A stretch of 64,000 nt of DNA from positions 800,150 through 864,149 of the forward strand of contig NW_015172563.1 in NCBI RefSeq assembly GCF_001447785.1, given 5' to 3'. Of the stretch, positions 12,271-37,100 are shown one piece after another; positions within the stretch are counted from its first letter, which is position 1; every line of letters begins with the position of its first letter. This DNA is from Gekko japonicus. Lineage: Eukaryota. Made by a program: the position numbers and the translations under genes. The notes below the pieces were generated by a model. The model made no database searches, was not told where the DNA came from, and saw only the letters and a list, made by a program, of their open reading frames with translations.

Positions 12271-15200
12271 CTCAGATGATCCTAAGGATCTTTTTTCAGA
12301 AGATATAAGTGAAGCCTTTATTGATTTCAGTCAAGTGTGCTCAGGTCACAGTTTTTGTAGCAACAAGCTCAGTCATGTGAGTATGTTCTGGATGTGTGAA
12401 GGCTGCCCACCCACGTAATGCTTAGAAATACAACTTGAAGTTTAGGTTTTGCTTTTAGTATGACAAGAGAGAACCTCTCTATACAGTTCTGACTTTACGA
12501 CTTTTAATTGCAGATGATACCAGCTTAACACCTGTTTTACACTGGCAAATCCATTCTAATTTATTCTTTCTCTTCACCTTCTCACAAGCACAACCTTTCA
12601 GTCTGGCACATGAGTAAGTTTCCAAATGCCAGCATACCTGTTGTTTGCAGAGTACTCATGTTACCTGTTAGTGGAACAGCTGCTGTGTGACAAAGGTTGA
12701 TCTCATGTGTTGTTCAGTTTATGTTTAAGAGTAAATTCTTCCCATGGATGACTGCAGTTTGGTCTGCTTTCTTGAGTCATGAAACAAGTTTAGATGGCTA
12801 CTCTTCTATACGTAAAGTCTTAATAAATGTATTATTACCTCAGCACTGTTTCATTTGATTTTTGTTCATTGTTAAAAAGACAGTGATAGTTTATCACAAA
12901 GACGCCTGACAGAGGTCAGTTTTGTAAGATTGCAATAATACTTACTTGGGGAGTAACTCCACTGAACTCAGTGGAATCTATTTACAAGTAAACATGCATG
13001 GCCTAGAGCTAAATCATGCCAAACTTCAGGTTTTGGTGAGTCTTGCCATGATGCAAGATGAAGTATTTTGGTTGAAATTCCTTTAGGGGGAAAAAAGTGA
13101 ACTAAGGGTTAAATAAAGGAGGCCTTTGGAGGAAGCTTTGAAGAAAAGCCATAAACCACAGGTGCAGGCTACATCCCATGGAAGTCACAAACGGTTTCTC
13201 TCCTTTGCACTCCAGATTTACAACACAAACCACCTTTTCCAGGCAACTTCATTTTATGTGTTATTTCTTGATTGATTGATTGATTTGACTATCCTGCTGG
13301 CTCAGGGCAGTAAACAATAAATTTTAAAACAAATATGATCTTACTAAAATTATATGTAAGTGTAATTAAGCAGCTAGAAATACAACCTCCTTTTCAGAAT
13401 GGTTCTCCAAAGCAGAATGGTTTTCCAAAGCAGCGGACAATAACCACAAAATAATTTGAAGTAGATCACAATCTAAAGCACAGGAAAACAGCTAAGCCAA
13501 AAAATTCATGTGATCAGAAAATATTTGCAACACTAGAAACAGAGGGTGAAAGCTACCTTTTGATTCGACAGGGAGCTAAATAACAGTCCATGGCAGGGCA
13601 TTATAGAGCTCTGGAGTAGTAATAGAAAAACCCACACTTGCAGAGGCTGAGGTAAATTGATAATTGAAGCAGGTACTTTCCTCTTCTGAAAGCCATTACA
13701 GGTGACAGAACTTGGTGCGTAGATAGCTTCCTGCTTCAGAACTGGCTGTTGAACTAATAAACTGAAGCAAACCTTAGAAGGCCAGGAGGAGGACTAACTA
13801 GAGCTAGTTTTCACAGATCGCAGCATAGTTTAAGAGAGGCACAGAGTTCTTGGCACTGCTGTCATCATATTTAAATCAGGTCTGAGTCTTTCTCATACAC
13901 CTGGTCGCCTGTATTTCAAGTCAATTGGGCAGAAATTTTAATCTGTTTAAAGAACTGATATAGGAAACATTAGGCTTTTAAGTATATGTTAAACTAACCA
14001 GTTGAGTAGCCCAGTTAATGGATCAGATATCTGTTCTAAAAAGAACTCTGTTTTCTTCTTTGAAGTTTTGCCTCCTGAAGAAAATTAGATGTTAGACTTC
14101 AAAGGAAAGTATACGGAGTTCCTTTCTGTAGTTGTATTGCCAAGGTTCTCCAACAGTTGGGTGTTAAACAATTCAAACTTATGTAGTTACTCTAATCTAA
14201 AACCTTTGAAATCAGTGGCATTAGACTAGAGTAACTCAGCATAGGATTACATTTTAAGAAGCCTAAATGGGGGGGGGGGAGGATAAAAAGAAGCCAATTT
14301 ATCAACTTAACATATTATTTATTTATTTATACCTCACATTTATACCCTGCCGTTTTTCATGGTTCAAGGTGGCTTACAATAATCGTAAAAAAACATTTCC
14401 TGTTAAAACCAGAACAATTTTTTTAAAACCCAATCCCATTATGTTATATTGTTAATATAAAACAACAACAACCCTGTTTAGAGTGGGTTTGAGAAGCCAG
14501 CCCTGGCTTCAGTGCAACTTTGTCACATTATTGGATCAGTCGATGGAATCAAACTAGGGTCGAAATGACAAAGGTGTGTGTCTCTCCTGCAACTATTTTG
14601 GTTATGCTTAAAAGCATACATACATACTTCAGCAATTTTTGCACTGATTGTACATGAAGGATGAAAGGGGGGGGAAACGGGGAGCAACCAGGACTGTAGA
14701 CAACTGAATAATCCTTCTGTTTATTATATTTTAGGCAGTATTTGTCCCCCCCCCCCAATACTTCCTGAAAACTAAGGAAATGCTTGGCAATTCACGCCCC
14801 TTGAAGCCTTGTGTATGCACAGAGTACTTGTCAATGTTTCCATTAACTTCAGAGGAAACTAGGGAGCTGCATAAATGCATCCTCTGATACACATGGAACT
14901 GCACCCCCCCCCCCCCCCCCCCCCCCCCCAATTCACTGCTCTCCAGCAATGTATGCAATTGCATTAGGGTCCCACTGTCCATGAGAGAATGTGACAATAT
15001 TGATAACTGTTTCTTAGGAACGCCTTGAAAGACTAAGCATGTTTCTCTGTGGAGACGTGCAACTGTTAAATATCTTGCCTGGAAAGTAATGGCAAACTCA
15101 GCCAACACAAAATCCTTCCAATAGACCTAATATGTTGCCCTGTCACAGGATTTCCCCATCAAATTATTTCCCATTCCCAAAGGGCAATGTCATGAATCAA

Positions 15201-15502
15201 TTTTGAGGGATTTATATACTTTCCTATTTGATTGCGATAAACTGTCACCAGTAAGATATTTATTAGCAAAAAGCAGAAAATGGCTACAATACAGCAAGCC
15301 CATTTATCTGTGTGCACAGCCTTCTTGTTTTGAATCTTGCTTTGCAAGACTTGGTAGTCTATAGTATATTGTGCAGAGTGTTTTCGGGACTGCTGTGCCA
15401 AAACAAGCAGAGAAAATAGAGCGGTGCTCAAAATCCAAGGTAGACGCTGATTGCGCTTTATGTATTGATCAGATTTCTAAAGAATCAAAACAGTGCCAGT
15501 AG

Positions 15503-15572
15503 CCACAAGGACCTGAAGGAGGTCCAGCTGTGATGAAAGGAGCTTACTTAACTGACAAATGGAAAGAACAAG
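15503..15572 (+). pseudogene. ARG1: Arginase-1 pseudo-exon 2
   Basis: After TAG, reads PQG-PEGGPAVMKGAYLTDKWKEQ(G), versus recalled human exon 2 [24 protein letters not shown](E). Same phase-1 end; the donor position reads GAAACT instead of GT. Confidence 0.7.
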
Positions 15573-16559
15573 GAAACTTTTCCAATGAAAAATACACCAG
15601 ATAATTGTAGTAATGTTATATCTAGGGCTGTAAACACACCCTAGGAAATGCGTCCAGGTTTCTTTTCACAAAAGGGATAAAGGAACCTGATCATCACATG
15701 GGAGTTTAACTTTTATTATCCAACATATAGATATTTGAAGTCAGCTGATTTCATTCCACAGAATATGGAAATGATCAAAAGATCAACTTCTACTCTAAAA
15801 GAGAGAAATGTTGGGTTGCCATAAAAACATGTTGTTAAAGATGAAAAGTTGTAAAAGAGTTATCCCATGCAGTGGCCATTTTGTTCTGACCCCAGTATAT
15901 GGGCAGATGAGGGTATGCCTTGCTGTATTCTCTTTGATTATGAGGTTAGTTAATGCCTGGATTTGGAGTCTAAACTTTTTGGGGGGCAATTAAAAAGGCT
16001 AAAAACTGACAGTTCAGAAACAAAAAAAGAGAAGAGGATATTGTTCATTTCTTTTGTTATTAATTATAAGTATTATGACAATAGGATAAATTATCATTAT
16101 TTATGTAAAAACAAAGCAAGTCCCCCATCTTAACAGCCTATAACAAAAAAGCCATATTTTCTGTCATTTTGTTTTGTTTTCTTTCATTATTGCAACCTCT
16201 GCCCCTACTGGTTTCACTTTTACAAGGCAGCCTGCATTACTTCTAATAAAAGGCCTAGTAAGAATGGTGTTTCTTAGGAAGAGAAGTGCTGGGCTTTTCT
16301 AGTTGTTTGCAAGCTGTAGCCACTAGGATTACATATATGTAAGAGGCATTCCAATCCTGAAGGATATAGGGTGGTACTTTGCCTTCCTGTCTCCTCCCAA
16401 TGCCTGCCCTGCTGTTACTGTTTGGAATCTCTATCAATTCTCTTCATGTTTCATTCTCTCAGAAAGGGGGGGGGAGGGGCTTCATGCTGTTTGTCTGAAA
16501 TTTGGCATTGTGGGTGTCGTTAGGGAATACCTTAATCCTCTTCCTGGGCAGGAAAGTTC

Positions 16560-17076
16560 TTGCCTCTATAGTACATGCCCTGGTAACATCTAGATTAGAT
16601 TACTGCAGTGCCCTCTCTGTGGGGCTACCCTCGAAGACTGTCTGAAAGCGACAGCCAGAGTGTTGACTGGAGTGGATTGTAGTCACCATGTCACTCCACT
16701 CCACTCTTATTCCATCTACAGTGATATTGACATTTTAAGCCCTATATGACTTGGGGCCAGCATACCTTAAGGTCCACCTTCTCCCACATGAACCTACCTA
16801 TCCCCTCTGGTTCTCTTTGGAGGCCCTGCTTCGGGTACCCCCTCCATCTGAGGCTAGACAGGTCACAACCTGAGAAAGAACTTTCTCGGTTATGGTGCCA
16901 AAACAATGGAACTCCCTCTATTGTTGTTTTCCACCAGTGGGTGAAGACTTATCTTTTGTTTGGCATACCTCCGATAACTGTTTGGCATACCTCCCTGTTT
17001 TGCATTTATATGTTTTTATTGAATTGTTTTGATGTTTGCCTCCTTATGGGCCCTATTTGAGTGAAAAGGTGGCATA
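16560..17076 (+). mobile_element. Degraded L2-like LINE fragment
   Basis: ctagattagattactgc (RLDYC-like) and a similar C-terminal region; copy A is inserted at its tail. Confidence 0.55.
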
Positions 17077-17089
17077 AAATGTTTTTATT

Positions 17090-18968
17090 TTATTTTAATT
17101 TTTTTTAAGCCCCCGGAGGGGATTTTTTATTAATTTTTTAAACACTACAAAAACTAGAACAGGAAAAAGGGAAAGGGAAAGCTACATATAAGGGAGAAAG
17201 TAAAGAACCCACAACTAACTAAAAACCCAAGAGAGGAGATCTCCAACTAGCTTTTTATACTTCATTCACTTTTCATCTTTGTACTTATGAACTGTGTCAA
17301 TCTTTTAACCCTTTTAACTATCCCCAGTTACATTTAATTGCCCAATAACAGTGCCCCCCATCATCCCCTAGAACCCAAGTTCTCAAAGGCACAATTCAGA
17401 GTCCTTCAGCCTTTACTTCTTCTTCTCTCTCTTCCGCAGTTTGTAGGAACTTTTGGGGGCTGATGCCCCCTGCTCAGACAAAGAGTCCTCACCAGACGAA
17501 CCAGTTTCCAGCTCTCCACCGGACTTATTGTCCTCTTTTTTTTCCTCTCGTCCTCTGGCCTTCCCAGCTGCTCCTTTAGAAACTCTTGAGCTTTAAGAAC
17601 AGAGTCAATCTTGACCTTCTTCTCTTTGATCTTGAATATTACGCCTTCTGGAAACAGCCATTTATATCCAATTGAGTTTGTTTGGAGGAAAAACACAAGT
17701 TCTTTGTATTTCTTTCTGCATTGTCTTACTTCAAATGGAATATCCTTTAGCGTTCTGACAGCATTCTCCCCCACCTTCAGGGGTGTCGCAGCAACTGCTT
17801 TCAGGATAGCATCCCTGACGTGCCTCTTCGAGAATCTTACTACAATTTCCCCAGGCAGATTATTTTTCTTTATGTATCCTGAATATGACCTGTAGGCCAC
17901 ATCCATGTCGTTGAGTAGCAAGTCCGCCTTTATATCTGCTACTGGGGCAAGTAGCTCACTCATAAGTTCTTTAAGATTCTCTCCTCTTTTCTCGGGCACC
18001 CCTTGGAAGCGCAGGACCATATTAGCCTTATCCATTTGCACTTGCAGCATCTGATCTTCCAAAGATACAGTTTTCTTTTCCAATTTTTGTACTTTTCCCC
18101 TCACTTTCTGCATTGTCTCAGCCATTTCCTTTACTTTCTCAGCATCCTGCTTCATTACTTACATACTTGAATCAAATCCGTTATTTGCGTTTGTTGAGCA
18201 GTAATGCTTGTTGTCACAACTTGCAGCTGCTTTTGTTGTGCAGTAATATTCGCTGTTACAACAGACATCTGTTCTTTAAAGACATTGAGCTGTTCCAGCA
18301 GAGGGCGCATGACCTCTGTCATCGCCTTCGTCGTCTCACTGGTCGTTTTGGGCTTCGGGAACTCTAGTTTCGCTTTTAAAAGTTTCTCTTTGTCTCTGTC
18401 CCTCTTCCCCGCCATTTTTCTCGTTTGTTTGCTTTCACAATAAATTTTAAAGTCTCTGAATATGCGCTTATCTGTATAGCTCGATGGGTGAGTACTTCTG
18501 GGCAATTTCGTGTTTATTCTTCCACTCCCTCCCCCTTTCACTCAATGATTTATGGGCATGGGAGGCCTCCCTCCCACTACTCGCTTCTGCCATTTTGCCG
18601 CTTCGGGTAAGGAGTGTCTTTTTGTTTAAAAATCAGTTCTCATTTGACTCACATTCATAGTTGGTCTTCCGACCCCTCTTCATTCATCATTTCAAACGCC
18701 TGATCTCCTGAGCTTGATCCGGCTAGCTTCACTTGTACCATCAGGTCTCTCAGCTGGATGGACCACTGGAGCAAGGGGGAGCCTCGATTCTCTGGCATTT
18801 GGCCAGAGAAGAGGCTACCCCCTCAAAGTTCCTTGGCCAGGTGCCCTTCTCCGGGCTCCTGGGGTGGTTACGAGCCTGCTCACCCCCTCCATCCGCCAGA
18901 GCACGGAGACACCCCCGGGAGGTCCGGGAGGTGAGTCCGTGAGCGTGCCGCCATCAACCAGAAGTTCT
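17090..18968 (-). mobile_element. ORF1-only L1-like retroposon (HAL1-like), copy A
   Basis: 13-bp TSD AAATGTTTTTATT (17077-17089 / 18969-18981); frameshifted ORF1 18415->17406 with L1 ORF1p RRM/CTD-like motifs (LRFQGVPE, KDIPFE, YKWLFPEG); AATAAA and A-tail; no ORF2. Confidence 0.85.
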
Positions 18969-19289
18969 AAATGTTTTTATTAACAGCATCAAAAACAACA
19001 AAACAGTCAATTTTGGAATTAGTAACAAAAATAAAAAACAGAGCAAATTTCCATGCACAAGTCGACTACTGTCTTGGTATTCAGTTTAAAATAGTGCTCT
19101 CCTACCATCCTTTCTCAATACTAATAAGAAAAGCCTCTAGTTTGATATCTCTTGGATAGGATAAAATAGAATGCTAATTTAGCATTTCCACATGATGTTT
19201 CATACTTTGCAATAACCAGGCATTGTCCTTTGTTTTGAATACTGTTCAGTGGCCCCTTTAAATTCAGTTACTGTTCTTTGCCTCTACAA

Positions 19290-19429
19290 GTTTAGTCTCA
19301 GCAGTGGATATAATGATCAACCCAGCTCGCGGTAAGACACCAGAACAAGTGAACACCACTATGAGCTCAGTTATGGCAATAATTCTGTCTTGTTTTGAAG
19401 CTTCATTTAGAGGATCCTCATTGTTCTAA
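19290..19429 (+). pseudogene. ARG1: Arginase-1 pseudo-exon 8 (last exon)
   Basis: LVSAVDIM-INPARGKTPEQVNTTMSSVMAIILSCFEASFRG versus recalled human [42 protein letters not shown] (about 20/42 identical). Acceptor reads CAA instead of CAG, the Glu277 codon is missing, and it is convergent with MED23 as in mammals. Confidence 0.85.
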
Positions 19430-19801
19430 TTGCCGCGTTTCATATTATCAAAGTAGACTCTGAATACATATCATGGTTTAAGCTCTAACATGTTTCTAGG
19501 AGTTCATTTTATGAACTGCTGGTTAAGTAGATAAGCTGCTAAGTAGGTAATTTTATGTTTACTACAGCCACCGTCTCTCATTTTGGTACAAATGTGGTGC
19601 AGAGCCATATGATCAATTTTTAAAAATACAAGTATAAATTTATATCCAAGGGTTTAGCTTGTGAATTCAAATGAACATTTGGATTCTGAAAAAAACTAAA
19701 CTTCAGGGCAGCATTTTGTCTTCCTCTTATATACCAGTGAATGGCCTGGACGCACTCTGTCTTACTAAACTCATGAAGCTAATAGATAAAATGAATGGTA
19801 T

Positions 19802-21053: not shown

Positions 21054-21100
21054 GTATTACCCTCAAATAATTTGGATGAACTATGCATAAATAAATAATT

Positions 21101-21106
21101 TTTATT
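21101..21106 (-). terminator. Candidate MED23 polyadenylation signal
   Basis: AATAAA on the minus strand ~900 nt past the stop, at the end of an AT-rich, repeat-free 3' UTR-like stretch. Confidence 0.55.
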
Positions 21107-22005
21107 AAACAATGTTATCAGTGCTACCATATATGAACAATATTTTACAAATCTTTACATTTTCATTAGATACCAAACAACATCTCATTAAAAAAAAGCC
21201 ACCAGACCAAAAAAAATAAAATGTGAAAAGTAGTACTACAAATCTAAATTAAAGTTCAGTTATTGCTAAAATTCAATAGCTGGGTAACAAATTGTAACAA
21301 CAGTAATAAAGGCCCCAGAAATAAAACTCTTAAATATATGTATTTTATACATAATTACACTTCAGAACTTGGAGGGGATATGAAAGAGGCCTGTTCATCC
21401 AGCAGATTTATTGTCCTTGATTTGCACAGCCAGTGTCTTTACTACCATGTACTGTCCTGGTCTTCAGGAAGGCTGTTGGAAAAGGTTACGGTCGGCATAA
21501 TCAAAATCTGACCCCGCAGGATTCCAAGTCTACCTTAAACCAGTTCCCAAAGATACTGCAACTAGTTGGATTTAAATCAGCCTGCTAGTCAATGGGATTT
21601 TAACATATTCTTGTTAAAATCTGAGGATCTCAGTCTTTGCAAAATGATGTCAGTGGAACAAGAAAAGTGCACATGTTGTTCGCAGTTTGTATTGTAAAGA
21701 TTTGCAAGATTAAAAGTGAACACTGCTGAACAATAGTACCATTGACAAGAAAAGTGAGGAACAAATAAGGAAAATAACTCCTGGCATTTTTTTTACAGCA
21801 GTCAGCTATTCAGATATCCACTGATTGAGTTCCTTTGATCAGACTAGTGGTAGAACATGCATATGCAGAAGTCAGCAAGGAACGCTGCAGTGGAATTTGT
21901 TCTGAATGCACTGTTGCTCTTCAAAATGGACTCACATTGGGTCAACTTTCATCTTGGATAACATCAGATTTCCTTGGCACAAGAGACACAAGTTGGAGCC
22001 TCATT

Positions 22006-22176
22006 TTACTGAGACACTGGCAAAGCAACATTAACCGGCACCTGATTAGGCTGAGGTGCTGGAGACACATTGCTTATAGGTTGCTGGGAAACAGAAGACG
22101 ATTCCATTTTGGTGATATGCATGAACCGTAGGCGAAGTTTCAAAGCGGGTCTCAAGTTGCAAATGATTTTCTCAAC
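22006..22176 (-). CDS. MED23: MED23 terminal coding exon (VEKIICNLRP...ALPVSQ*)
   Basis: AAG acceptor, TAA stop at 22006-22008. Confidence 0.95.
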   Translation of the reverse strand, partial: VEKIICNLRPALKLRLRFMHITKMESSSVSQQPISNVSPAPQPNQVPVNVALPVSQ

Positions 22177-25100
22177 CTTTAATATAAGCAGAGATTAAAA
22201 GGTTACAGAGCAAAATATAGATCATGCAAAGATTATTTGATAGCGAATATTACTAGTAGTTTAATTTTCATCCTGTTCTTTGTTGAAAGCTCTGGAAGAG
22301 CTACCAAAAGATTTTTTTTAAAAAAATACAGCAATATAATTTCATTGGCAATGTTTTGCTGAAAACATTTAGTCTGTTTTTCTGCATGATTTCTATACTT
22401 AAACGAAATAGAGAAAAAACCCTAAAAAATTCCAGCAAGACACCCCAATATATTCCAAAATCACCACCTGCTTCTATAAACCTCACATATGATGAAGTCT
22501 CTACCCTCTAGCTAGCTTCTTGTTCTCCCATCATTAACAACTTTTCCCTTTCAACCTTTAGAGTACTTTTGATAAGTGTATCAACATGGAATTCTGGTGA
22601 ATATTATTTAACTGAAAAGTCCTGAAGTTTAAGTTTCCCATGTTTCTGTGGCATCTCCAGACAACTTAGGGTCCTGCTGGAGCTGTCTGCTGCTTCTGTT
22701 CAACTTCGCTTGGGATCTGTAGCCCCAAATCAACTGTGAGCTGAAGGCATACATGGTAGAAACAGGTGAGAAAGACAGGTAGAGGGCAGCAGTCGATAAC
22801 TTTTCTCTCAGTGGTCCCTTTAAGAGGCAATCTACACATTGCTTGTCCCCTCCCACACCCTATGTCTTGTCAAGTGCTGAATGTTTCTCAAATGGCATAG
22901 TTTGGCTCCATATCTACCATGCTTAGGGTGCATTTTGGTGCTCATGGTAAGGAAGCAGGGACACAAAAATACATGGCCCAACCACAACCAAGCAGAATTA
23001 ATGTTAACTAGGGACAGGCTGAGCGCCGAAGAATAGATTCTTTTTAATTATGGTGGTGGAGAAGACTCTTGAGAGTCTCCTGGACTGCAATGAGATCAAA
23101 TCAGTCAATCCTAAAGGAAATCAACACTAACTGTTCCCTGGAAGGCCAGATACTGAAGCTGAAGCTCAAATACTTTAGCCACCAAATGAGAAGGGAGCAC
23201 TCACTGGAGAAGACCTTGATGCTGGGAAAAATTGAAGGTCAAAGAAGAAGAGGATGGCAAAGGATGAGATGGTTAGACAGTGTTATCGAGGCAACAAACA
23301 TGAAATTAAGCAAACAAAGGAATACAGGAGGGCCTGGCGTGATGTGGTCCATGGGGTCGCGAACAGTCGGACAACAACAACAGGGACAGTCCACCTAATT
23401 TCCAATTGTTTATCCACATCATGAAAAAGCTTACATGACTATTTAAGAATTTTTCCTTGAATGAAGAAGAGGTAAACAATTGGGGGGAGGGTCCTGAGCA
23501 ACCTGCCTGGGAGGATTATCTATTAGAGTCAATCCTAGCTCAACTGCCTGATTCCTAAACAAACCTCGGCACACAAAGGCACAACCAAAGTACAATTCAA
23601 AACTTGATTTAATTATTTGAATTGTGGGATGTTTTGCCACAGAAGCAGACTATGTTTTACTAAAGTGTAAGAAGAAAAATAAGAACTCGGGAGTCTTCAA
23701 GTTGATGTCTAATAATGTTAACAAAAGAACTGGTTTCTTTCAAGTGAGGTTTGTCATTCACTTACTTGGTCTTTCACACTGTCTCCAGTAAACATATATT
23801 TCACATGATAGAGAAAATCACATATGGGATCCATGTAGTTAAGATGAGTGTTGCACTGGTCTACCTCCAGGAGCATTTCGTAAAAAGCTACTCCAATCTA
23901 TTGTCACAAAAAAAATAAATGCAATTTAAACTGAAACAGCCAGGAAAATAATATTATGTATTCTAGTACCTTTCGAAAGCAAGAAATTGCAAGAAGATAA
24001 ATAGGTAACAGCGTTCTGTGCACCTTGGTATCTAGTCATGCCGGCCACATGACCACGGAAATGTCTTTGGACGGCGCTGCCTCTTTGGCTTGGAAACGGA
24101 GATGAGCACCGCATCCCTAGCAAAATTGCCTTACAAAGGAGTTTGTAAGCCGCTCTGAGTGAAGGGCAGGGTATAAATCTAATCTCTTCTCTTCTTCTTC
24201 AAGACCAAGTTTAAAGCTCGCTTTCTTTTGTTACGTACTGCATAAGCACAATTTTATGACCTCCAAAATATCCTAGACAGTTTATTTTAAAATTTGTTCA
24301 TTGTGCTTAAAGAGATAAGTTTGTGAATGCCAGCATTCAATGTGCTCTCATTTCTGCTTGGACTTGATTTTAAATTCTCAAAAGTGCTTTGCAAGCGTAC
24401 CAGAAAGTAAATTCAATTTTGTTAATACAAAAATGTGCCAGGAAAGGGACTGGGTGATCTTTTTACAAGAAACAATTTAGTGTTTTGATTAAGAGAAGCA
24501 ATTGAAACTCCAAACATTAACCACAAAAACAGCAAGGTTCTCATGAAGCTACTGAGCTATATAATACACGTATTCACATGACCTATGTTGATGGTATAGC
24601 CGCACTCAAAACTCACAGTGTTTAACTCCATTGTAAAAAGGCTGGAACAAGATAAGAAGCAAGAGTTCTGCTATTATTATCTCTATTAGCACTCCTACCT
24701 AGTCACTTTCATGATCTCGGAAGGGTTGCTAGGGGAGGTGGACATTTTAATCCCTTTCTTTCCATTCCTCTTCCACAATTTAAATTCTCCCCAAGCTACA
24801 ATGAGTTCTGTGCAAAGGAAAAGACTTTCCCCCTTCTACATAGCTAACTGCAGTTTGGAGGGTGAGTTAAATCACTGAAGGGGCATGGATAGAAAAGGTT
24901 ATACATTCAGGAAAAGGATACCAAATGCAGCTTTACTGGACCGATTCTGTTGGCAGGATAGGAAAACAAGTTTGCAGTTTGTTCACAACTCCTGTTTGGA
25001 CAGGAAGCATTCCACACAGTTCAAAGACTTGCTCTCCTTCCAATAAATAGCTGGGAGTTTTCTTGGAATAACCTACCTCTAACATACACCTTGTCCTCTC

Positions 25101-28100
25101 TTGATTAAACCGCTGTAGGAATGGGCCGACAAGATGATAAACGTAGAGTAACTGGAATTCAGTCTTGACTATTGGTATCAGTACTTCAGTGAGGAACCTG
25201 TTGTGTTTCAGAAACTAGAATAAGTAATCTCTCCTTATATATAATCCTGTTTTGGGGTGAACGTTCCACATGCTCCGTCAGCATTTGGCTCGCTGACCTG
25301 TAACTCCAATGATGTGCCAATCCAGTGGCTGCATTGCTGGACTTAGCGTATTGGCCATTTCTAGCTCTCCCATTGGCTGTGCAGAGTGGTTCCATCAGCC
25401 ATTGGGCTATTGGCCACCACTCAAGAGTACTCGTGTGCCATTGGCCAGGTGCTGGGTCTGCTCCTCTTCCCCGCCCATTTTCACTTCAGCCCCTGCTCCC
25501 TGTCAGATTTGCTGGCAGACTGCTCTCTCTACTGAGGAATACACTTCTCTTGGCTCCTGTGTGGGACGAACTCTCCCCTCAGTGGCTGTTGGTAGGCAAC
25601 CAAGCTTGCTACTGTCAGTAAAAAGACAAAGGATAACCCCCTCCCACTGCCAGCTTGGCCACTTTCCTGTCAGAATAAATTGAAATCAGCTCTCTCTCCT
25701 TTTTGGTTTTGCCATGGCTGGCTGGCTAATGAGGTGGACCAGCAGCCATCAAACCATTCCCTTCAACCCCCTGGTTTTTTGGCTGACTTTCCCCTAGGGT
25801 TGCCAGTCTCCAGGTGGGACCTGGAGATCTCCCGCTGCTACAATTGATCTCCAGATGACAAACGTCAGTTCCCCTGGAGAAAAGGGCTGCTTTGGAAGGT
25901 AGACCCTATGGCATTATACCCTGCTGAGTCCTTCCACCCCCCCAGTGCTGCCCTCCATAGGATCCACCCCCCAAATCTCCAGGTATTTCCCTAATCAGAG
26001 CTGGCAACTGTACTTTCTCCTCAGTGCCTGTTGCTAGGCAACCAAGCTTGGTTCTGTGAGTAAAAGGCCCTTTCCACACCTATGTTGGCCTTTGGGAGAA
26101 AACTAATTGGGGCCAGTCCTGATAGGGTAGCCAACTCCAGGTGGGAAATTCCTGGAGATTTGAAGGATGGAGCCTGGAGAGGGTGAGGCTTGAGGAGGGG
26201 TGGGACCTCAGACAGGGTCAATGCCATAGACGCCAAACTCCAAACCAGCTATTCCCTGATGGGGAAACATTGTTGCCAATCTCCAGGTGGGGGATGGAGA
26301 TCAGTCAGAATTAGAACTGCTCTCTAGGAGGGAGGAGATGTAAAGCTGAAGCCAGGGGACAGATAACAGTAGGTTGATGGTTGGCCATGAGGGAGATACA
26401 GTTGCCAACTCCAGGTTGGAAAATTCCTGGAGATTTGAGGGGTGGAGCCTGGAGAAGGTGAGGTTTGAGGAGGGGTAGGACCTCAGACAGGTACAGTGCC
26501 ATAGACTCCACCCTCCAAACCAGCCATTCCCTCCTGGGGAAAGCCTGTTGCCAATCTCCAGGTGAGGGCTAGAGATCACTCAAAATTACAACTGCTCTTC
26601 AGGTAGCAGAGATCAGTTCCTGGGGAGAAACTGGTGGGCTCTGTGTCATTATACCCTGCCGAGGTCGCCACAGCAAATTGTCATTTAGTGCCCAAAGCCG
26701 GGGCACTCTCCCAGAGCCTCTTTCTAGTGCTCACTGTATTTATTTCCACAACGGGCCTTATTCCTAGTTACACTATAAACCAAAATTAATACAAAGCTCT
26801 TCATTTTATACCCTGAATTCTGGCAAGAGTCCTCAAATTAACAATTGACTTATATGCTTAATCATTGGCATAAATTTAAGGGAGAATATTTATCTATTTG
26901 TTGTGCCCTGTGTTTAAGACGTGACACATATTATTTAGGTGAAATTAGTATGCATAGATAACAGAAAATACCCACTACACATACTTTGGAATGAGGGAAA
27001 GCTGGCCAATGCTTGAATGGTGCCAGACAGCATGCGCCAATGCCAATGTGTAGCTACAGCACATCTCCGAGTAAGACTGGTGGCAAGCTGTGAAGTCAAA
27101 GAGCTGGAATGGGTAACCAACCCATTCAGTCTCTGAGGTCAAGCTAGGACTGTTGACAACACTCACAATCCGTTCATGGAGAACAATCCAGTAGGGCTCC
27201 TGCAAAATAAAGCCACCCCATGACAAATTATTAGCATACTTGGGACATTCAAGTACACAGACAAATATCAATCATAGACAGTGACTGTGACCCATCATGA
27301 AACTGAGGACCAGTTGTTAGTTATAAATACCAGTCTTTCAAGGTGCTGTCCCTTACAGCTCTAGTAACACAGGAATGAAAAAGCCATCAGACAAGAGGGA
27401 AATAATCTGAGAATATGTTGGCATCACCCACACAATCTCTCCTCTCCCTTGTGGTTACGCCATTCTTATGTTACAAAAGCAGAGCAGAACAGAATCACCA
27501 ACCAGGCCTACTCTATAATGAAAGAGCTGGGACTGGGATATTGAGGTTTCTAATGATCCAATGCTAATGCAGGAAGTTGCTCAATCTTTTCAAACAGATA
27601 GCTTTGTGTTATATGATTTCTGGCCCCACTGGTGGACTTCCTGATGGTACCTGGGTTTTGGCCACTGTGTGACACTGACAACGGATGGGCCATTGAAATG
27701 ATTCAACACGGCTTCTCTTATGTTTTTAACTGAACAATTAAGTTAGTCTACAAATGCTTCATAATCAGTCTATGAAACTGTTTCACAGTCACAACAATCT
27801 AAGTAAACATTACTCCACATTACAGAATATTTGGTTTTAAAAAGGCTGCATTTGTCTAAACTCATAAGGAGGGCACAGGAGGAGCTGGATACATGTCATG
27901 TGCTCCTCAGTTTTCATTTAAAAATACCACAAACTTAACTTGTGCATCTATAGTGTTTGCTGAAAGCTCATATAGTACAAAGCTAAATGTTTAGTGGTCT
28001 ATAGACAAGTCTTGGTACCTCCCATCCAAAATGGTTCCAATTACTCCTCTTCCTATATTAACAGTTTGCCTTTCTTGTTGAGACTCAAGGTGGATTACAA

Positions 28101-31100
28101 TGCAATAAAAACCAGCACAATAACACAGGAAACAATGCAATACTATTTGTTTAAAAGCTGCCTAATTTTTTTCACAGACATTACAATGACAGACCAGTTC
28201 CCTGTATAAGAAGTGCTCTGCTGATCAACTCCATTTTACAACAGTCCTTTTTCCTCTACAAAAATATCCTGAACAGCTCATTTTTACACATTCGGCAGTA
28301 AAAAAAGTAAAATGGAAAAGGTCATATCCTCCCCACCCTAATTTTCCTATTATATTTGTTAGCATTTTAGCGTCTCATTTTAAACATTATTTTCATCAGT
28401 GGTACAGGATTACTTGTCTTTTCAATTAGTCAGAATCAAGGCAACTTACAGGCAAGAATCAAGGCAACTTACAGGCAAGGCAGTGATAATCAGTCCAATT
28501 GCATTCATCCATGCTGTTATATTGTCTCTAGGAACTAATGGCTGACTGGAGAAAGTGAGATAAAAAAGGACTCATGTACTTAATATCAGCAGTTTATGGT
28601 AGAGATACATACCATTTTTAACATAAAACTGTCTCTATTTTTCAGAAGAACTTCAACCTACCTTTTCAGCACAACATTCAGAAGGGCATTTCCTACATCC
28701 TTTCCTGGAACAGCCAATGCCATGAGTTCAACACAGGTAACATGCAGTGCATGGGCAGCTGGGTTAGGAAACTCATTGAACCTCCAGTCACAGTTTGGGA
28801 ATGGTGACTTGCCAGCCATCGGTGAGAACGATTAAGGTAATCAACTGATATGACATAGGAAGCAGCTGCCATTACAGGGGCTGTTTCTTTTTTGGAGAAC
28901 TGCAGTGGTACAGGCTAGAGCTTCCATTTGGTCCTTAATATGTAGGAACAGACTGTAAGCTCAAAAATCATGGGATAGAAGGACAAGTCCTTTTATGGAT
29001 CAAAAACTGGCTAGTTCATAGAAAACAGAGAGTGAGTGTAGGTGGGCAATTTTCTCAGTGGAGGGTGGTAAGCAGTGGGGTACCGCAGGGATCAGTACTT
29101 GGTCCACTGCTTTTTAACTTGTTCATTAATGATTTGGAGATGGGAGTAAGCAGTGAAGTGGCTAAATTTGCGGATGATACAAAGTTGTTCAGGGTGGTGA
29201 AAACCAGTGAGGATTGTGAGGCACTCCAAGGGGATCTGTCAAGGATGGGCGAGTGGGCGTCAACATGGCAAATGGGGTTCAATGTGGCCAAGTGCAAGGT
29301 GATGCACATTGGAGCCAAAAATCCTAAATATAAATACACATTGATGGGGTCTGAACTGGCAGAGACTGAGCAAGAGAGAGATCTTGGAGTTGTAGTGGAT
29401 AACTCACTGAAAATGTCGAGACAGTGTGTGACTGCAATAAAGAAGGCCAATGCTATGCTGGGGATTATTAGGAAGGGTATTGAAAACAGATCAGCCAATA
29501 TAATAATGCCCCTATATAAATCAATGGTGAGACCTCATTTGGAATACTGTGTGCAGTTCTGGTCACCACACCTTAAAAAGGATATTATAGCTTTGGAAAA
29601 AGTGCAGAAAAGGGCAACTCGAATGATAAAAGGGTTGGAACACTTTCCCTATGAGGAAAGGTTAAAGCGCTTAGGGCTCTTTAGCTTGGAGAAAAGACGA
29701 CTGAGGGGTGACATGATCGAGGTTTATAAGATTATGCATGGGAAAGAGCAGGTAAAGAAAGAGGTACTTTTCTCCCTTTCTCACAATACAAGAACTCGTG
29801 GGCACTCCATGAAACTGCAGAGCGGTCGGGTTAGAACGGATAAAAGGAAGTACTTCTTCACCCAAAGAGTGATTAACACATGGAATTCACTGCCACAGGA
29901 AGTGGTGGGTGCTACAAGCATGGACGGCTTCAAAAGGGAATTAGATAAGCATATGGAGCAGAGGTCCATCAGTGGCTATTAGCCACAAGGTATAGCTAGG
30001 GGCTCTGGGGCAAGTGATGCTCTGTCTTCTTGGTGCTTGGGGGGGGGTCAACAGTGGGAGGGCTTCTAATGTCCTGGCCCCACTGCTGGACCTCCTGATG
30101 GCACTGGTATTTCTGGCCACTGTGTGACACAGAGTGTTGGACTGGATGGGCCTTTGGCCTGATCCAACATTGGCGTCTCTTATGTTCTTATGTTCTTATG
30201 TTCTTATTAACTATTATGTTGTATGTTCAGGCCATTCATGCATGGCTCATATATGCAGATCTGAGCAAAACACAGTGCAGAAACCTAGGTTACATAGTGT
30301 CTGCTGCTATTTTCTCTTCTAGTCATTTGAGCACCTTGGTACTATAGCGTAATCAATGTAGAGATTATGCATTTTCAAACAAATAATGATACGTATTATA
30401 CATTCTTAACATGTTTCCTCCACCCAAGATATTCCAGGTGGCTTGTTAAGAAAATGATTTGCCCCTGCTTCACATCCTTGATTTTTTTCTTGGCTAACAA
30501 TAATAATCTGAATGCCGCTCCTGAAAAGACAAAACTATGAATGGGTGGAGCGCAAAAAAAAGAAAAGCATCACAGCACAGCCAACTACAGATTAATTACA
30601 ATGCAAACAGGTGTCTCAATGGTTTTCTGATATTTTACCTACACTCACTATTATAAAAAAGGATATTATCGACCAGCCTTGCAATCAGTTTACAGTAATA
30701 TATGTCATCAGGGATCCATGGATTATCTTCTCGTGCATTCATAGCACATTTGAGGTAAATGTCACTCAAGCACCATCCTAGAGGCCGATTATCCTTAAGG
30801 GAACCAATGATGGCATGGACCAGTTTCCGTTTGAGGTTTGGACGGTCCCGGAGATGTCCTTCGTAGTAGTGAAGTGTATTGTACAAGTAGGTTACTGGAC
30901 GATCTGCAAGGAGACAACAGGGGTATTCACAAACTCAAAGCCAGGGTCGAGTACAGTCTGCACTACAAAAATGAAAATTCTGTACACAGGCAATTCAAAT
31001 AACACGACAAGGAATGCTCAATTTGTTGCTCTATAAATTACTAGCCTGATACCTGTGCTTCGCTATGGTATTTAACTTCCGTAAATCCAGTTATAATACT

Positions 31101-34100
31101 GATGATGTAAAGTTTGAAATGTAACATTTGTTGTAGGAATTCTAATGGAGAAGACTGTAGTGTAAAAAATGAAGTGAGACATACGTACTTTTTTTCTCTC
31201 TACTGAAGGACCTTTCTGTAGACTGCTGGGGCAGGCTCCCTCATGGCTTTAAGTACCCTGCCACCGCTGCTGCACCTGACAGACAACGGCCTGTTAGGTG
31301 TAGGAGGTGGGGGGAGTGTGTTGGAAGCCATCAGAGGGGCTGGGCCAGCAGCATCGTTAAGGTGATCTTGCTGGGGCAGTGTCCCTGATGTATTAAAGTA
31401 CCCTGCTCCTGCTCCTACACCTGACAGACACCCGCCTGTCTGGTGTTGGGGGGATTATGTTTAAAGGCATCAGGGAGGCTGGGCCAGCAGCAGAGCTAAG
31501 GCAATCTTGCTGAGCAAACCTCCCCAGGGGCTGTAAGCATCCCACCTCCTCTCCTACACCTGACAGACAGCTGCCTGTCCAGTGTAGGAGGGGGAGGGGG
31601 GAGGAGTATTGGAAAGCACTGTGGAGTTGGGGCTGACAGGATCACTAAGGCGTTACTGCTGGCGCAGGTTCCCTTGTGGCTTTAAGCACCCTGCAACCGC
31701 TGCTGCACCTGACAGACAACTGCCTGTCAGGTGTAGGAGGGGGGAGCATGTTTGAAGCCATAGGGAGGCTGGGCCAGCAGCTCACAGGTGGTTGGCCACT
31801 CCTGATTTCCTCAACTGTCATTAGCTCTCTGTAGTCCCCTGTAACTGTTTTTTTTAACCTCAGAACACTGAGCTCTGCAGTTGACCAATCAGAGAGTAGG
31901 GGGTGCAAGGAGGCAGCCCCTGGCAGCCACGTAGGAATCAATGGGGGAGCACATTTTACCCCTTTTGACTCCCTTAGGGGTCGAATTTCTAAAAATCCCT
32001 TTTTAGTGAGCATCTACGTCATGGTAGGAGTGCTCTCCCTGAATTTGGTGTTTCTAGGTTCAGCGGTTTGGCCTGGGCGTTGATTTTACGGTGAGGGGAC
32101 TTTCTTTTATATATATAGATGTAAATTGATCAAATTAGTATGATTGGATTTTGTACAACAGCTTATTCTGCAAGTTTTACTATTTCATGTTTGGTAGCTG
32201 TGGGAAGAGGAAGTACTGTATACTAAAGCCTGCCCCAATTACTGAAATCTTATGTATAACTTCCAAGATTTCATTTGACACTGCTCATGACTTTTCAAGT
32301 ATCCATCTGAAACCACAAGAACTAGAAACCTGTAGAAATTTTTTTTTTAAGTGAAGATGTTCTCAGGAAGCTGGATTCTGTGTTCAGTACTAGATGCCAC
32401 CACACTTTCTGTGAATGTCCCCAGTATTGTTGACACACATACAGCCCTACTCTTAGCATGAACACAAGGTCAGAGGCTAGAGTCCCTTTGAGGAGAAAAT
32501 CAGGTCAGAAATTTAACAAATAAAATAAAAACAATTAAGTACAGAAGTCCAACTGAAAAAATTTAGAATTATTTCTGAACCACAGGGGATTACTTTCTTA
32601 ATCCTTATTCTAAAGAAAGGGCGAGACAGAGGGAAGGTATTGCATTCTTATTAGTGTTCTGCTCAGCCTGCTGAATGTTGCCATTCAGGTACTTCTTCAG
32701 CACTGAGCTATCAATCTGTGCAGCCTTTCCTCAGACCTGGGCTTCTTTGTTTGAAAGGATATGTGAAGATACATTTTTTAAAATGCCATCCTGACAGCTA
32801 TGTGGGCATCTAACCTTAAGCCCCTAATCCAAACATTAGCAAGCACTTCCAGGTAGACATAGAGCTCCTACATGAGTGGGCTTGCCTGTTCACATTACGA
32901 AGAAACTTTCAAGTGCAATGCAAATATGCATGTACAGAGCTACCCCCTGCCTTTGAAGTAAAGGGTGTACACCTGAACTCCATGAATGCTTCATTGCAGG
33001 GACACTCCCTTACTAATAATACCTGTGAAGATAATGTGACAATTGAATATGAACATTCTAGGGTGCTCATAGATTACATTGACAGGTAGGACCTCTATGT
33101 CAACCCTGAAGTGTTTGCCAATGTTTGAACCAGGGACTTAAGGTTAGATGCCCCATAGCATTTTTTTTTAAATGTACCTTCACATAGCCTTCAAACGAAC
33201 AGATCCAGGTCTTCTTAGGATTAGTTTCCCAACTATAAGTGTGACAAAGTCTTATTCTGACATTTCTATACTAGATTGGTGAGACAAGCAAAATCAGGGT
33301 TTTATGAACATGAAGCCTGACTTGAGGAATTTTTTTTTTTTAATTACCATCTTGTTCTGTGGAAGAATTCAGTGATCTTACAAGCAAGACACACCAATGT
33401 CCTGTTTGGAACTCACCATGGAATTTGTATAAGCCCCCTAGATGATCCAGCAGAGTCTCCAGTGACTTGGACACTGGAAGCAGTTCTAAAAATCTGTGAA
33501 TCACAATGTCAAACACTGGTAGGAAACGGAGGCAAACATTCCCAAAGTATATCGGTAAGTACTGGGGTTGGATCTGAACAGGAGGATTAACTTGCTCTGC
33601 TAAGCCTTCAAAATACAGCTTTTCAGGATATTTCTGGGGGAGAAAGTTTGAACAACATTAAGTTACCTGTCTAATCTTCACAATGCTTCAAAGATGTTTG
33701 ATTCTATTCAGAATCCTCCCCCCCTCCCCGATATATACACTGCAACCCTATACACTCTTGTAAGCCCATTGACTTTAATGGACTTAGACGTCAATGGACT
33801 TAGAAGAGTGCAACTCTGATTAGGTTATACTGTCAACGCTCTTGCTTTACATTCATATTTAATTGAAACCTTTTGCAAAAACTGGAGTTATATAGTAAGA
33901 AACCTATATATAGAGTTAACAGAATTAGAAAAAGACCCAGGCTCCAAATCATGCACACATTTAGGCTTTGGAACAGACAAAGGTGATTTTTAGAGTTTCT
34001 GATCTCCAATCTCCAAGAAGACTGAATCTGGACTTACCTACAAGATTATACATGCACGATAGTGCTTTCTGAACCAGGCACCACTGGAGGTGACTGAGTG

Positions 34101-37100
34101 ATTCAGTTTCACTTTACACACATGCAAGGAGCCATAATGTCTAAATCCTGACCTGTTCTGAATGCTATCAAAGCTGCTTCATTCCCCCATTCGCTGATCA
34201 GCTAATATCTAGATATTACCCATGATGAAGATACTGTGTGATCTTCTCTGTGCATCAGTCCTTCCCACTGTCAGAACACACTCCCAGTTCAGTTTCAATG
34301 CTAAAATGCTACAAGCTGAGCTATAATATCTTCTCTTTACATCTGACATAATAACATTACTGTACTTATACTAAACACATCCCTCTATCATGCAAAAAGG
34401 AATAAGGAGTACCATAAATATTCCGTAACAAGTATTTGTGACTACTCAGTTTATAGAGTTTAAAGTACCTTGTGGTAAGTCATGTGCTTAGTATGCCAGT
34501 CATTCTGTAGCCAATGCTCTGGGGAGTTCTCCTTCACAAAATCACTCACTCTGTTTCGGAAATCATTCGGTTTAAGTAAAAGCAACTGGATGATGAAGTA
34601 GCACACCTGAGCTTCATTTCCTTCATGACTGCGCATAGCCTGTAATGAAACAAAGATAGTACTGCAAAGCGATAAGAGACAAAGTCTTCAGTTACATTAC
34701 TGCAGTTAAACACTTCAACTTGTTACACTGAAATATAATGTGGGATCCACTTAAGAAAAATGGGAACCAGGTTACATCTAAGAAACCTGGCAATAATGCA
34801 TAATTTCTCTTTAATAGCCTATATCTAATGCTGAACTTGGCCTCAAAGTACAGATCAAAAAGTCTGATCAACAGAGCCAGGCACAGAAAACAGAGGTGCA
34901 AATGTGGAGAACACCCCCGGGTTTGTTGACCGCCCTTGAAACCCACAAAAGCAAATGTTTGCAGCTGCAGACATTGTAACTAAAACAACAAATCACTATC
35001 TCACACCACTACATGGTGAGACCCCAGTGGTAACTTCACTGGACATGGTTTGATGTAGAAAATGCAACAAAGGTGCTTTCCTCTTCAAGCCCCTATCCCA
35101 TCAGCTGTCTAATGATGACTGATGGAGTGGGGCTTGGAAGGGAAAGTAGGTCTGGCTTGTCTTCTGCTCCATGCCCCCACACCGCTCGCTAACCCACTGA
35201 TGGGGACGCTTGGGGTGGAAAGCACGCCACATACATTTTTGGTTATGAGATTCAGCAGTGTTTTGTATTTTAGATTCAGAAATTCTGTAGAATACTTGTA
35301 TAAGCATCCTACATCCAGTGAATCAGAAAAGGACTACTACTTTTGGAGTAACTTTACAAGGAGACAATATATGTTAAGGCATTCCTTACCAAACATAGTA
35401 TCAGCCTGTCCAGTGTCACAATATTGTATTTCCACACCATGTCATTGAGAATCTCAATACATTTGTTGAGCTGCTGTCCTCCTGCTGATGTGGAAAATTC
35501 ATAGACCAGGAAATCTGCAAATGTCCTAACATGAGCAACCAGAGCTCTGGCACCAATTCTTTCTAGCACTCTAAGAAACAGGAAAGAACAGAAAAGTGAC
35601 TGTAGCAGTTATGCAATTAATTAATTTAATAATGGAACCTCAAGGGCAGCTATTCAGTCTATGTTTCCTATTAGCAATCAACCAATATCTGAAGTCGCAC
35701 TACTACATAGAATACTGAAGCAAGATAAAACTTGCAGAAAACTCTCAGTAAAATGAGTGGCTATGCAGACTCTTAGATGTCTTCTGAATTACTAGACAGG
35801 ACTGTTAAGAGTTCTGTGGTATATTTTGTGTTGATTTGCTGTGACAGCACTGGTTACAAAGTCTGGCTTTCAGCGAATGCCTGGCAGCACCTTTACTTCT
35901 ACTTAGCCCTATTCATAATGCATGCTAGAGAAAGAGGCAACCACTGACCAATGCAGAAAATACCAGTGCCTCAGGAAACAAAGCATATGCTGACTGAATG
36001 ATGACTCCATGTGGAAGATAACTCTGTACTAATCTAATATTCCAGAAATTGATTTTACAGTTCCATATACCACGAGGTACAGTTTAATCTTGAAAAGACT
36101 TACCGGTAGCCAATTTGGTTGATGTGATCGGTCTCCAGCAGCATCTTCCAGAGAAGACAGAGGAAGAGCGGAGGGGAACCCTGCATGGAAAAATGGGTGA
36201 TGATGTCATTCTCAATGGTCATCGACTTCCACTTTCGGTATTCCTCCTCCACATTCTTCTTCAGGTTGAAGCGGCTCTCTTGAGGTACATTGTTTTGTTT
36301 GAAGAAAGCCTGAAATACAGTAGCTTTGTTATGAACAGATCTGAATGCAACATTCATATTTTCATCTGCAGATAACTAACTGTGGTGGGTTACTCTGACT
36401 CCAGTGTTTTCCTTTGCAACTAGAAACAGTAAGAGCTTAAGGGGCTGAACATACACTGTTCATTTCAAAAGATTAGAAAACCCAGGTTTACCTAGGGTTG
36501 CTAGGTCCCCTTGTTGCTCTAGCAGGGGGATTTTGGGTGGGGGGCGTTCTGGGACGTCCCCGATGTGATGATGTTACCCAGAATTGATGGCATCACACTG
36601 GGGACATTGTGTGTGGATGCTCTGGTTTAAGGACAAAACTCTATGGTAAAACTGGCTTAAAACCATGGAGTTTTGCCCGTAAACCAGAACGTCCCCACTT
36701 CCAGGTGACGTCATCATGTTGGAGAAGTCATGCGGGGATGTGGCTGTTTGGGGGCAGGGTTCTCCCTGCTAGCCAGCAGGCCAGTGGTGGGGAGAAGCCC
36801 CCAAAACTGGGGGAAACCCCTGCCCCGCCCTGTGGACTGGCAAGTCTAGGTTTACCTGCCATGTATTACTTTAGGTTCAAGGCTTATTTCTGTCAATATC
36901 ATTACTAAGGGTTGCATTCAGTTTATTTTTCTAAAACTTAATTTCATTTATTTTCCTCCACTATTATCTAACATCGTTCCTTCAAGAAATTATTCTGAAG
37001 TGAGCTTAATGTAGCATATTTTTCTTTCATAGCAACCTGCTTTTATGTGTAAGCATTAGTGGACTACATTTGTGAAAATTACCTGCAGTGGAGCTGGAAA

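What the first reader, a model, noticed from the sequence alone, without database searches (positions are those of the whole stretch)
15503..19429. Unitary ARG1 (arginase-1) pseudogene convergent with MED23
Seen: two + strand segments align to recalled human ARG1 exon 2 (15503-15572) and exon 8 (19290-19429) in the right order and phase. The exon 2 donor reads GA instead of GT, the exon 8 acceptor reads AA instead of AG, and the codon for Glu277 is deleted (DIMEVNP becomes DIM-INP). Exons 3-7, which include the Mn-binding ligands, are not recognisable in the ~1.3 kb of non-repeat sequence between them. Established: ARG1 lies tail-to-tail with MED23 in mammals, Glu277 binds the substrate guanidinium, GKTPE is ARG1-like rather than ARG2-like, and squamates are uricotelic. 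Inference: a molecular fossil of the loss of the cytosolic urea-cycle arginase, missed by the ORF track.
Basis: partly seen in the sequence, partly recalled or inferred. Interest (0 to 1): 0.8.

Follow-up and report, generated by a model that had tools for sequence, protein, structure and literature searches.

The report
Dead arginase-1 gene beside MED23
Next to the intact MED23 gene this lizard genome keeps only the broken first and last pieces of ARG1, the liver enzyme that makes urea; this fits an animal that excretes uric acid, and the same gene is already known to be missing from the chicken genome.

Summary
The last-exon remnant is real. Window 19292-19426 (+) matches only arginase-1 chains in the Protein Data Bank (E about 5e-6), and the alignment needs a one-residue gap exactly at Glu277. 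It lies tail-to-tail with a colinear MED23 gene, as in human.

The exon-2 remnant (15503-15572) is at the stated place, with an AG in front and GA where the donor GT should be. At 23 residues it reaches no threshold in any search. Its identity rests on my recalled human sequence (about 22 bits by hand).

No trace of exons 3-7 or of the manganese-binding motifs was found by Pfam, NCBIfam, PDB searches of stop-free pieces or a six-frame motif scan. There is no assembly gap between the two remnants. The 1.9-kb LINE-like element between them is a clean insertion with a 13-bp target-site duplication, so it is not an assembly collapse.

DNA contigs from two other samples carry the same lesions. Two RNA runs give no reads on either remnant but cover the nearby MED23 3' UTR.

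Verdict: a decayed ARG1 relic at the orthologous locus. "Unitary", the timing of the loss and the link to uricotely could not be tested, because no vertebrate ARG1 sequence or other squamate genome was reachable. This is an ordinary kind of finding and modestly interesting.

The parts
15132..15188 (+). Speculative ARG1 exon-1 remnant. ATG plus 19 codons (MLPCHRISPSNYFPFPKGN), followed directly by GT at 15189-90.
   Evidence: Read. It has the same codon count and phase as human exon 1 as I recall it, with about 6 of 19 residues identical. No tool support: PDB search of piece 15090-15203 gave no arginase and Pfam gave none.
15503..15572 (+). Probable ARG1 exon-2 remnant: 23 codons plus one base (phase 1). 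AG acceptor at 15501-02. GA at 15573-74 where the GT donor should be.
   Evidence: Sequence. No hit in PDB, Pfam or NCBIfam. The match to ARG1 residues 20-43 is from memory only. The X1 DNA contig covering 15400-15736 is identical.
16829..16987 (+). Old copy of an interspersed repeat that also occurs at 4460-4648 (-) and 11810-12016 (+).
   Evidence: tblastn within the window, E 6e-6. Depth is raised across 16200-16999.
17077..17089 (.). Left copy of the 13-bp target-site duplication AAATGTTTTTATT.
   Evidence: Exact match with 18969-18981.
17090..18968 (-). High-copy LINE-like element that encodes only an ORF1-type protein (frameshifted ORFs 18541-18155 and 18155-17406), with an A-rich tail at its low-coordinate end. 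It inserted between the ARG1 remnants.
   Evidence: Word depth of 1e5-6e5 against about 60 in the flanks. 46-49% amino-acid identity to two other copies in the window. Best PDB hits are LINE-1 ORF1p at E about 0.1 only.
18969..18981 (.). Right copy of the 13-bp target-site duplication.
19290..19429 (+). ARG1 last-exon (exon 8) remnant: 2 bases of a split Gly codon, 45 codons and a TAA stop. AA at 19288-89 where the AG acceptor should be. The Glu277 codon is missing between 19315 and 19316. The C-terminus is about 13 residues shorter than in rat or human.
   Evidence: PDB phmmer E 4e-6, arginase-1 chains only. X2 contigs are identical. The X1 contig differs at 19291 (T>G, silent) and 19328 (C>T, Arg>Cys) and repairs neither lesion.
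22009..51772 (-). Convergent MED23 gene. The putative last coding exon is at 22009-22194, assigned by position and reading only (no Pfam hit). Nine further exon pieces were tested up to 51.7 kb.
   Evidence: Pfam PF11573 hits are colinear, from profile positions 294-365 at 51.5 kb to 1268-1304 at 23.8 kb, E 1e-6 to 1e-32. RNA reads cover the 3' UTR at 21000-21399.

Best explanation
This is the decayed remnant of the arginase-1 gene (ARG1) at its ancestral position, tail-to-tail with MED23.

Only the ends survive: a clear last exon, a probable exon 2 and possibly exon 1. The roughly 225 codons of exons 3-7 carry all the manganese ligands, and they have been removed by deletion or eroded beyond recognition. 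The space is now about 1.1-1.3 kb of single-copy DNA plus two transposable-element copies.

What remains carries further lesions:
- the exon-2 donor reads GA;
- the exon-8 acceptor reads AA;
- the codon for the substrate-binding Glu277 is lost;
- the C-terminus is shortened.

The locus makes no arginase and is not detectably transcribed. It has no function; it records the loss of the cytosolic, urea-forming arginase in this lineage.

Shown: ARG1 identity of the last exon, synteny, missing Glu277, absence of detectable middle exons, absence of RNA in two runs.

Inferred: exon 1 and exon 2 identity, deletion as the mechanism, relaxed selection because the animal is uricotelic.
For: - PDB phmmer of 19292-19426 hits only arginase-1 chains (E 4e-6), with a gap at Glu277.
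- MED23 exons are colinear on the opposite strand, and its putative last coding exon (assigned by reading, no Pfam hit) would end about 2.6 kb from the ARG1 stop.
- In human, ARG1 and MED23 both lie at distance 0 from one SNP, with ENPP3 50 kb away (PMC4581711).
- No arginase hit in 30 stop-free + strand pieces by Pfam, in 10 pieces by NCBIfam or in 7 pieces by PDB phmmer.
- No GGDH, DAHxD, DxDxxDP or GGLT motif in any of six frames of the whole 64 kb.
- No N run between the remnants.
- The LINE-like element between them has a 13-bp target-site duplication, so both of its junctions belong to one insertion.
- Contigs from two other DNA samples carry the same lesions.
- RNA runs X21 and X22 give zero reads on 15400-16399 and 19000-19799, but reads on the MED23 3' UTR.
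Against: - Exon 2 is not significant in any database search.
- No vertebrate ARG1 protein could be fetched, so no tblastn or exonerate was run. Badly eroded exon 3-7 fragments could have been missed. The family models were not even sensitive enough to recognise the true exon 8.
- The tissue of the RNA runs is unknown, and only 3% and 12% of them were read.
- Short contigs do not bridge 16340-16386, 16790-16916 or the LINE interior.
- An intact ARG1 copy elsewhere in the genome is not excluded.
Confidence: 0.85

Rival explanations
1. The relic is real but not unitary. An intact, expressed ARG1 copy exists elsewhere in this genome (a translocated or duplicated gene), so the animal still has a cytosolic arginase.
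For: Nothing positive. The rest of the genome could not be searched. A word search of the scan's notes on this genome found no note on arginase, which says little.
Against: - The relic sits at the ancestral position beside MED23.
- Vertebrate ARG1 is a single-copy gene in most lineages (my knowledge).
- Arginase I is also missing from the chicken genome (PMC2566978).
Confidence: 0.08
2. Assembly artefact. ARG1 is intact in the animal, and the middle exons were dropped by a collapse or mis-join at repeats in this assembly.
For: The Logan contigs of X1 and X2 break at the repeats and do not bridge 16340-16386, 16790-16916 or 17125-18936.
Against: - No N run in the interval.
- The largest repeat is flanked by a matching 13-bp target-site duplication, which a collapse between two different copies would not give.
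- The point lesions (GA donor, AA acceptor, lost Glu277 codon) lie in single-copy sequence and recur in two other samples.
- No RNA reads on either exon.
Confidence: 0.04
3. Only the last exon is an ARG1 relic. The exon-2 (and exon-1) resemblances are chance, and the 5' part of the gene is wholly gone.
For: No database support for 15503-15571 or 15090-15203. The hand estimate is about 22 bits only.
Against: - Right strand, right order and 3.7 kb upstream.
- AG immediately before, and the exon ends in the same phase.
- A possible 19-codon ATG exon with a GT donor lies 314 nt upstream.
- All of these comparisons rest on the recalled human sequence.
Confidence: 0.2

Closest known systems
Absence of arginase I (ARG1) from the chicken genome
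   Same: A uricotelic sauropsid lacks a working cytosolic arginase. Caldovic and co-workers found no sequence similar to human arginase I in the chicken genome, while four other urea-cycle genes were present (PMC2566978).
   Different: In chicken nothing similar was found. Here a recognisable relic with one to three exons survives at the ancestral locus, in a squamate. Whether the two losses are independent is not known.
Functional vertebrate ARG1 (rat and human arginase-1, e.g. PDB 1rla, 2aeb)
   Same: The last exon aligns to residues 269-310 with about 49% identity, including DIM, NP, GKTPE and LSCF. The neighbour and orientation relative to MED23 are the same.
   Different: - Glu277 is missing.
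- No Mn-ligand motifs are found anywhere in the window.
- The splice sites are mutated.
- The C-terminal tail is shorter.
- No transcription is seen in two runs.
Classic unitary pseudogenes tied to a change in physiology (GULO in primates, urate oxidase in hominoids)
   Same: A single-copy metabolic gene is disabled in place, with conserved neighbours, in a lineage whose physiology no longer needs the step (my knowledge).
   Different: Those cases keep most exons and are dated by shared lesions across species. Here most of the gene is gone and no cross-species comparison was possible.

Membership tests
ARG1 orthologue (as opposed to ARG2 or another ureohydrolase) | Sequence closer to arginase-1 than to arginase-2 | tested here: met
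   All 26 PDB hits at E<=10 are arginase-1 chains. No arginase-2 chain is listed. That ARG2 structures are in the PDB is my own knowledge.
ARG1 orthologue (as opposed to ARG2 or another ureohydrolase) | Conserved position, convergent with MED23 | tested here: met
   MED23 exons on the minus strand are colinear. Human ARG1 and MED23 are adjacent. Unchecked notes of the scan place AKAP7 before and ENPP3 after the window.
ARG1 orthologue (as opposed to ARG2 or another ureohydrolase) | Conserved exon boundaries and phases | tested here: inconclusive
   The boundaries of the exon-2 and exon-8 pieces fit the human gene as I recall it. No reference gene structure could be fetched.
Functional arginase (ureohydrolase fold, Pfam PF00491) | Binuclear-Mn ligand motifs (GGDHS, DAHxD, SxDxDxxDP) | tested here: not met
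   The regex scan of all six frames of the window found none. No PF00491 hit in 30 pieces.
Functional arginase (ureohydrolase fold, Pfam PF00491) | Glu277, which binds the substrate guanidinium | tested here: not met
   There is a one-residue gap at this position in the HMMER alignment. The role of the residue is my own knowledge.
Functional arginase (ureohydrolase fold, Pfam PF00491) | Transcribed and spliced | tested here: not met
   Zero reads on both remnants in RNA runs X21 and X22, while the MED23 3' UTR is covered. Tissue is unknown and only part of each run was read.
Unitary pseudogene | Disabled at the orthologous locus | tested here: met
Unitary pseudogene | No functional copy elsewhere in the same genome | not testable with these tools
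Unitary pseudogene | Functional in outgroup lineages | not tested
   Mammalian ARG1 structures exist. The status in turtles, tuatara and other squamates could not be checked.

The most novel reading that the evidence does not exclude
ARG1 was inactivated in the squamate (or lepidosaur) stem, independently of the loss in birds, as a convergent genomic signature of uricotely. This gecko-type genome would then hold one of the few surviving relics (exons 1, 2 and 8), with lesions that could be compared across squamates and tuatara to date the loss.
Probability: 0.35. Interest if true: 0.5.

Novelty: new member of a known kind. Interest (0 to 1): 0.35.

Why it matters
It gives a concrete genomic trace for something long known from physiology: lizards and snakes excrete uric acid and do not run a hepatic urea cycle.

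If the same lesions are shared across squamates, the relic would date the loss of cytosolic arginase. It would also show whether birds and squamates lost ARG1 independently.

It warns annotators and immunologists that ARG1, a standard marker of M2 macrophages in mammals, cannot be assumed to exist in this lineage.

In itself it is one more metabolic pseudogene, and ARG1 absence in a uricotelic sauropsid (chicken) has been reported since 2008.

Tried and rejected
- **Fetching a vertebrate ARG1 protein for tblastn failed by every route.**
  - The full-library HMMER search with the exon-8 peptide returned only two tandem-repeat artefact proteins, P0001 and P0002. Their scores are inflated by summed repeats.
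  - The word search found no candidate sharing three 5-mers.
  - The ESM Atlas gave no usable hit.
- **No exonerate or tblastn with turtle, frog or human ARG1 was run.** I did not type the recalled sequence into any tool.
The exons were searched one by one, by reference.
- **Family models were weak controls.** Pfam and NCBIfam did not even recognise the true exon 8, so their silence on other pieces is weak evidence. PDB phmmer is the better control.
- **A possible exon-3 start was rejected.** Acceptor ttcattccacag at 15750-61, followed by AA that would complete Glu44, then Tyr-Gly-Asn-Asp. PDB, Pfam and NCBIfam give nothing for 15749-15835, and beyond YG the resemblance is nil.
- **The idea that the LINE insertion caused the exon loss was rejected.** It has intact target-site duplications.
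- **Ten literature searches found no paper on a squamate ARG1 pseudogene**.

Full report
**The observation.** The + strand at 19292-19426 translates without a stop to LVSAVDIMINPARGKTPEQVNTTMSSVMAIILSCFEASFRGSSLF, followed by TAA. phmmer of this 45-residue piece against all 177,635 distinct PDB sequences returns 26 hits. Every one is rat or human arginase-1 (E 4e-6 to 1e-4), aligned to residues 269-310 of the full-length chains. About 20 of 41 positions are identical, and there is a single gap opposite Glu277 (DIMeVNP against DIM-INP). Allowing for the roughly 2,800 pieces of this size in a six-frame translation of 64 kb, the match is still unlikely by chance. The context removes the remaining doubt.

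The bases in front of the exon are AA (19288-89), not AG. An in-frame AG lies 6 nt further in (19294-95), so this lesion alone would not disable the exon. The open frame ends about 13 residues earlier than in the mammalian proteins.

**The exon-2 piece.** Positions 15503-15571 read PQGPEGGPAVMKGAYLTDKWKEQ, preceded by AG (15501-02). They are followed by one G and then GA where a GT donor is expected. This piece gives no hit in PDB at E<=10, in Pfam or in NCBIfam. Against my recollection of human ARG1 residues 20-43 it has 13 identities in 24 columns with one gap. By hand this is about 22 bits, which gives E of about 0.05 if only exon 2 is placed within 10 kb upstream, and about 0.6 if the whole protein is allowed. 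I rate it probable, not shown.

Reading upstream, I noticed an ATG at 15132 that opens 19 codons (MLPCHRISPSNYFPFPKGN), followed at once by GT. This leaves a 314-nt GT-AG intron to the exon-2 piece. The codon count and phase are those of human exon 1 as I recall it, but only about 6 of 19 residues agree, and no tool supports it.

**The middle of the gene.** I could not fetch any vertebrate ARG1 sequence, so tblastn was not possible. Instead I did the following:
- Pfam on 30 stop-free + strand pieces from 15090 to 17057 and from 18943 to 19426.
- NCBIfam on ten pieces.
- PDB phmmer on the longest single-copy pieces.

None hit an arginase. A regular-expression scan of all six frames of the whole window for the family's Mn-ligand and substrate motifs (GGDH, DAHxD, DxDxxDP, GGLT) found nothing. 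The scan recovered only the DIM-INP and GKTPE motifs of exon 8 itself, plus one stray match to a looser pattern at 59703-59720 on the minus strand.

These searches have limits. The family models did not recognise even the true exon 8, and short, frame-broken fragments could escape. Exons with the same level of decay as exon 8 would, however, have been seen by the PDB searches.

**What fills the gap.** There is no N run between 15503 and 19429. Read depth from two DNA runs marks three zones:
- 15400-16200 and 19000-19800 are single-copy (about 55-90).
- 16200-17000 is moderately repeated.
- 17000-19000 is extremely repeated (1e5 to 6e5).

The big repeat (17090-18968, minus strand) carries a frameshifted ORF1-type reading frame. 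This frame is 46-49% identical to two other copies in the window. Its best PDB matches are LINE-1 ORF1p, at E about 0.1 only. The element ends in an A-rich tail and is flanked by an exact 13-bp direct repeat, AAATGTTTTTATT, at 17077-89 and 18969-81. It is therefore a clean retrotransposition. It did not remove the exons, and it is not a collapse between two repeat copies.

Positions 16829-16987 are an old copy of another interspersed repeat. Without the LINE, exon 2 and exon 8 would be about 1.8 kb apart. That is too short for five exons (about 675 coding bases by my recollection) with their introns. One or more deletions are the likeliest cause; this is inference.

**Independent samples and expression.**
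- The contig of DNA run X1 covering 15400-15736 is identical to the window.
- The contigs of run X2 covering 18939-19464 are identical.
- The X1 contig covering 18936-19837 differs at four positions. These include 19291 (silent) and 19328 (Arg to Cys), and none restores the acceptor or the Glu codon.
- The lesions are therefore not base-calling errors of one assembly.
- RNA runs X21 and X22 (raw reads; 3% and 12% of the runs read; tissue not known) give zero reads over 15400-16399 and 19000-19799.
- The same runs do cover the MED23 3' UTR at 21000-21399, up to about 36-fold in X22.
- Reads on 17000-19000 come from the repeat family at large.

**Context.** Nine of ten tested minus-strand pieces hit Pfam Med23 (PF11573) in colinear order, from profile positions 294-365 at 51.5 kb to 1268-1304 at 23.8 kb (E 5e-6 to 1e-32). 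The tenth piece, the putative C-terminal exon at 22009-22194, gave no Pfam hit and is assigned by reading only. On that reading the two genes converge, with stop codons about 2.6 kb apart.

In human, one SNP at 6q23.2 lies at distance 0 from both ARG1 and MED23, with ENPP3 50 kb away (PMC4581711). Unchecked notes of this scan place AKAP7 about 166 kb before the window and ENPP3 about 43 kb after it. They call the genome a gecko. I did not verify these, and organism names were coded.

**Interpretation.** This is the relic of ARG1 at its ancestral locus. It lacks the catalytic core and a substrate-binding residue, its splice sites are mutated and it is transcriptionally silent in the data available.

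**Rivals.**
- An intact copy elsewhere in the genome: untestable here, about 0.08.
- An assembly artefact: made unlikely by the target-site duplication, the absence of gaps and the shared point lesions, about 0.04.
- Only exon 8 is genuine: about 0.2. This is compatible with the main reading.

**Comparison with what is known.** Arginase I was reported as absent from the chicken genome in 2008 (PMC2566978). That lizards and snakes excrete uric acid is textbook knowledge (same paper). Ten full-text searches found no report of a squamate ARG1 pseudogene, but the library is incomplete. I class the finding as a new member of a known kind: a pseudogene of a metabolic enzyme that the lineage's physiology made dispensable.

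Noticed in passing
window 17090-18968 (-), 40010-40985 (-), 55085-56047 (-): Three copies of a very high-copy LINE-like element that carries only an ORF1-type protein (coiled coil plus an LRFQGIPEK-type domain), with no ORF2 behind any copy. One copy has an intact 320-aa ORF. Another is flanked by a 13-bp TSD and an A-rich tail, so it looks like a complete, non-autonomous 'half-LINE'. RNA reads map to the family. There is no Pfam hit, and the best PDB match is LINE-1 ORF1p at E about 0.1.
   Followed up: partly
window 15132-15190 (+): Possible ARG1 exon 1: ATG, 19 codons ending PFPKGN, then GT. A 314-nt GT-AG intron would lead to the exon-2 piece. This is based on the recalled human sequence only.
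   Followed up: partly
window 15572 / 19290: The exon-2 piece ends in phase 1 and the exon-8 piece starts in the matching phase (G + GT = Gly). A direct 2-to-8 splice would therefore be in frame. No RNA supports it, and the donor is GA.
   Followed up: partly
window 4460-4648 (-), 11810-12016 (+), 16829-16987 (+): An interspersed repeat whose translation carries a conserved ...RAFSV.AP.WWNELP...LLQFCR.CK.ELF..AF motif. Three copies of different ages lie in the window.
   Followed up: partly
window 16061-16070, 19291, 19328, 19434, 19523: Polymorphisms between the window and the DNA runs: a 10-nt deletion at 16061 in both runs, and four SNPs in X1 around exon 8, including Arg>Cys at 19328.
   Followed up: no
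window 11279-11366: An 88-base N run sits inside an open reading frame (11156-11755, minus strand) that continues in frame on both sides. It lies beside reverse-transcriptase ORFs (Pfam RVT_1, 9843-10430).
   Followed up: no
P0001, P0002: The full-library HMMER search with a 45-aa query returned only two long tandem-repeat proteins, with E of 1e-12 to 1e-16 produced by summing many weak repeats. These are artefacts, not relatives.
   Followed up: yes
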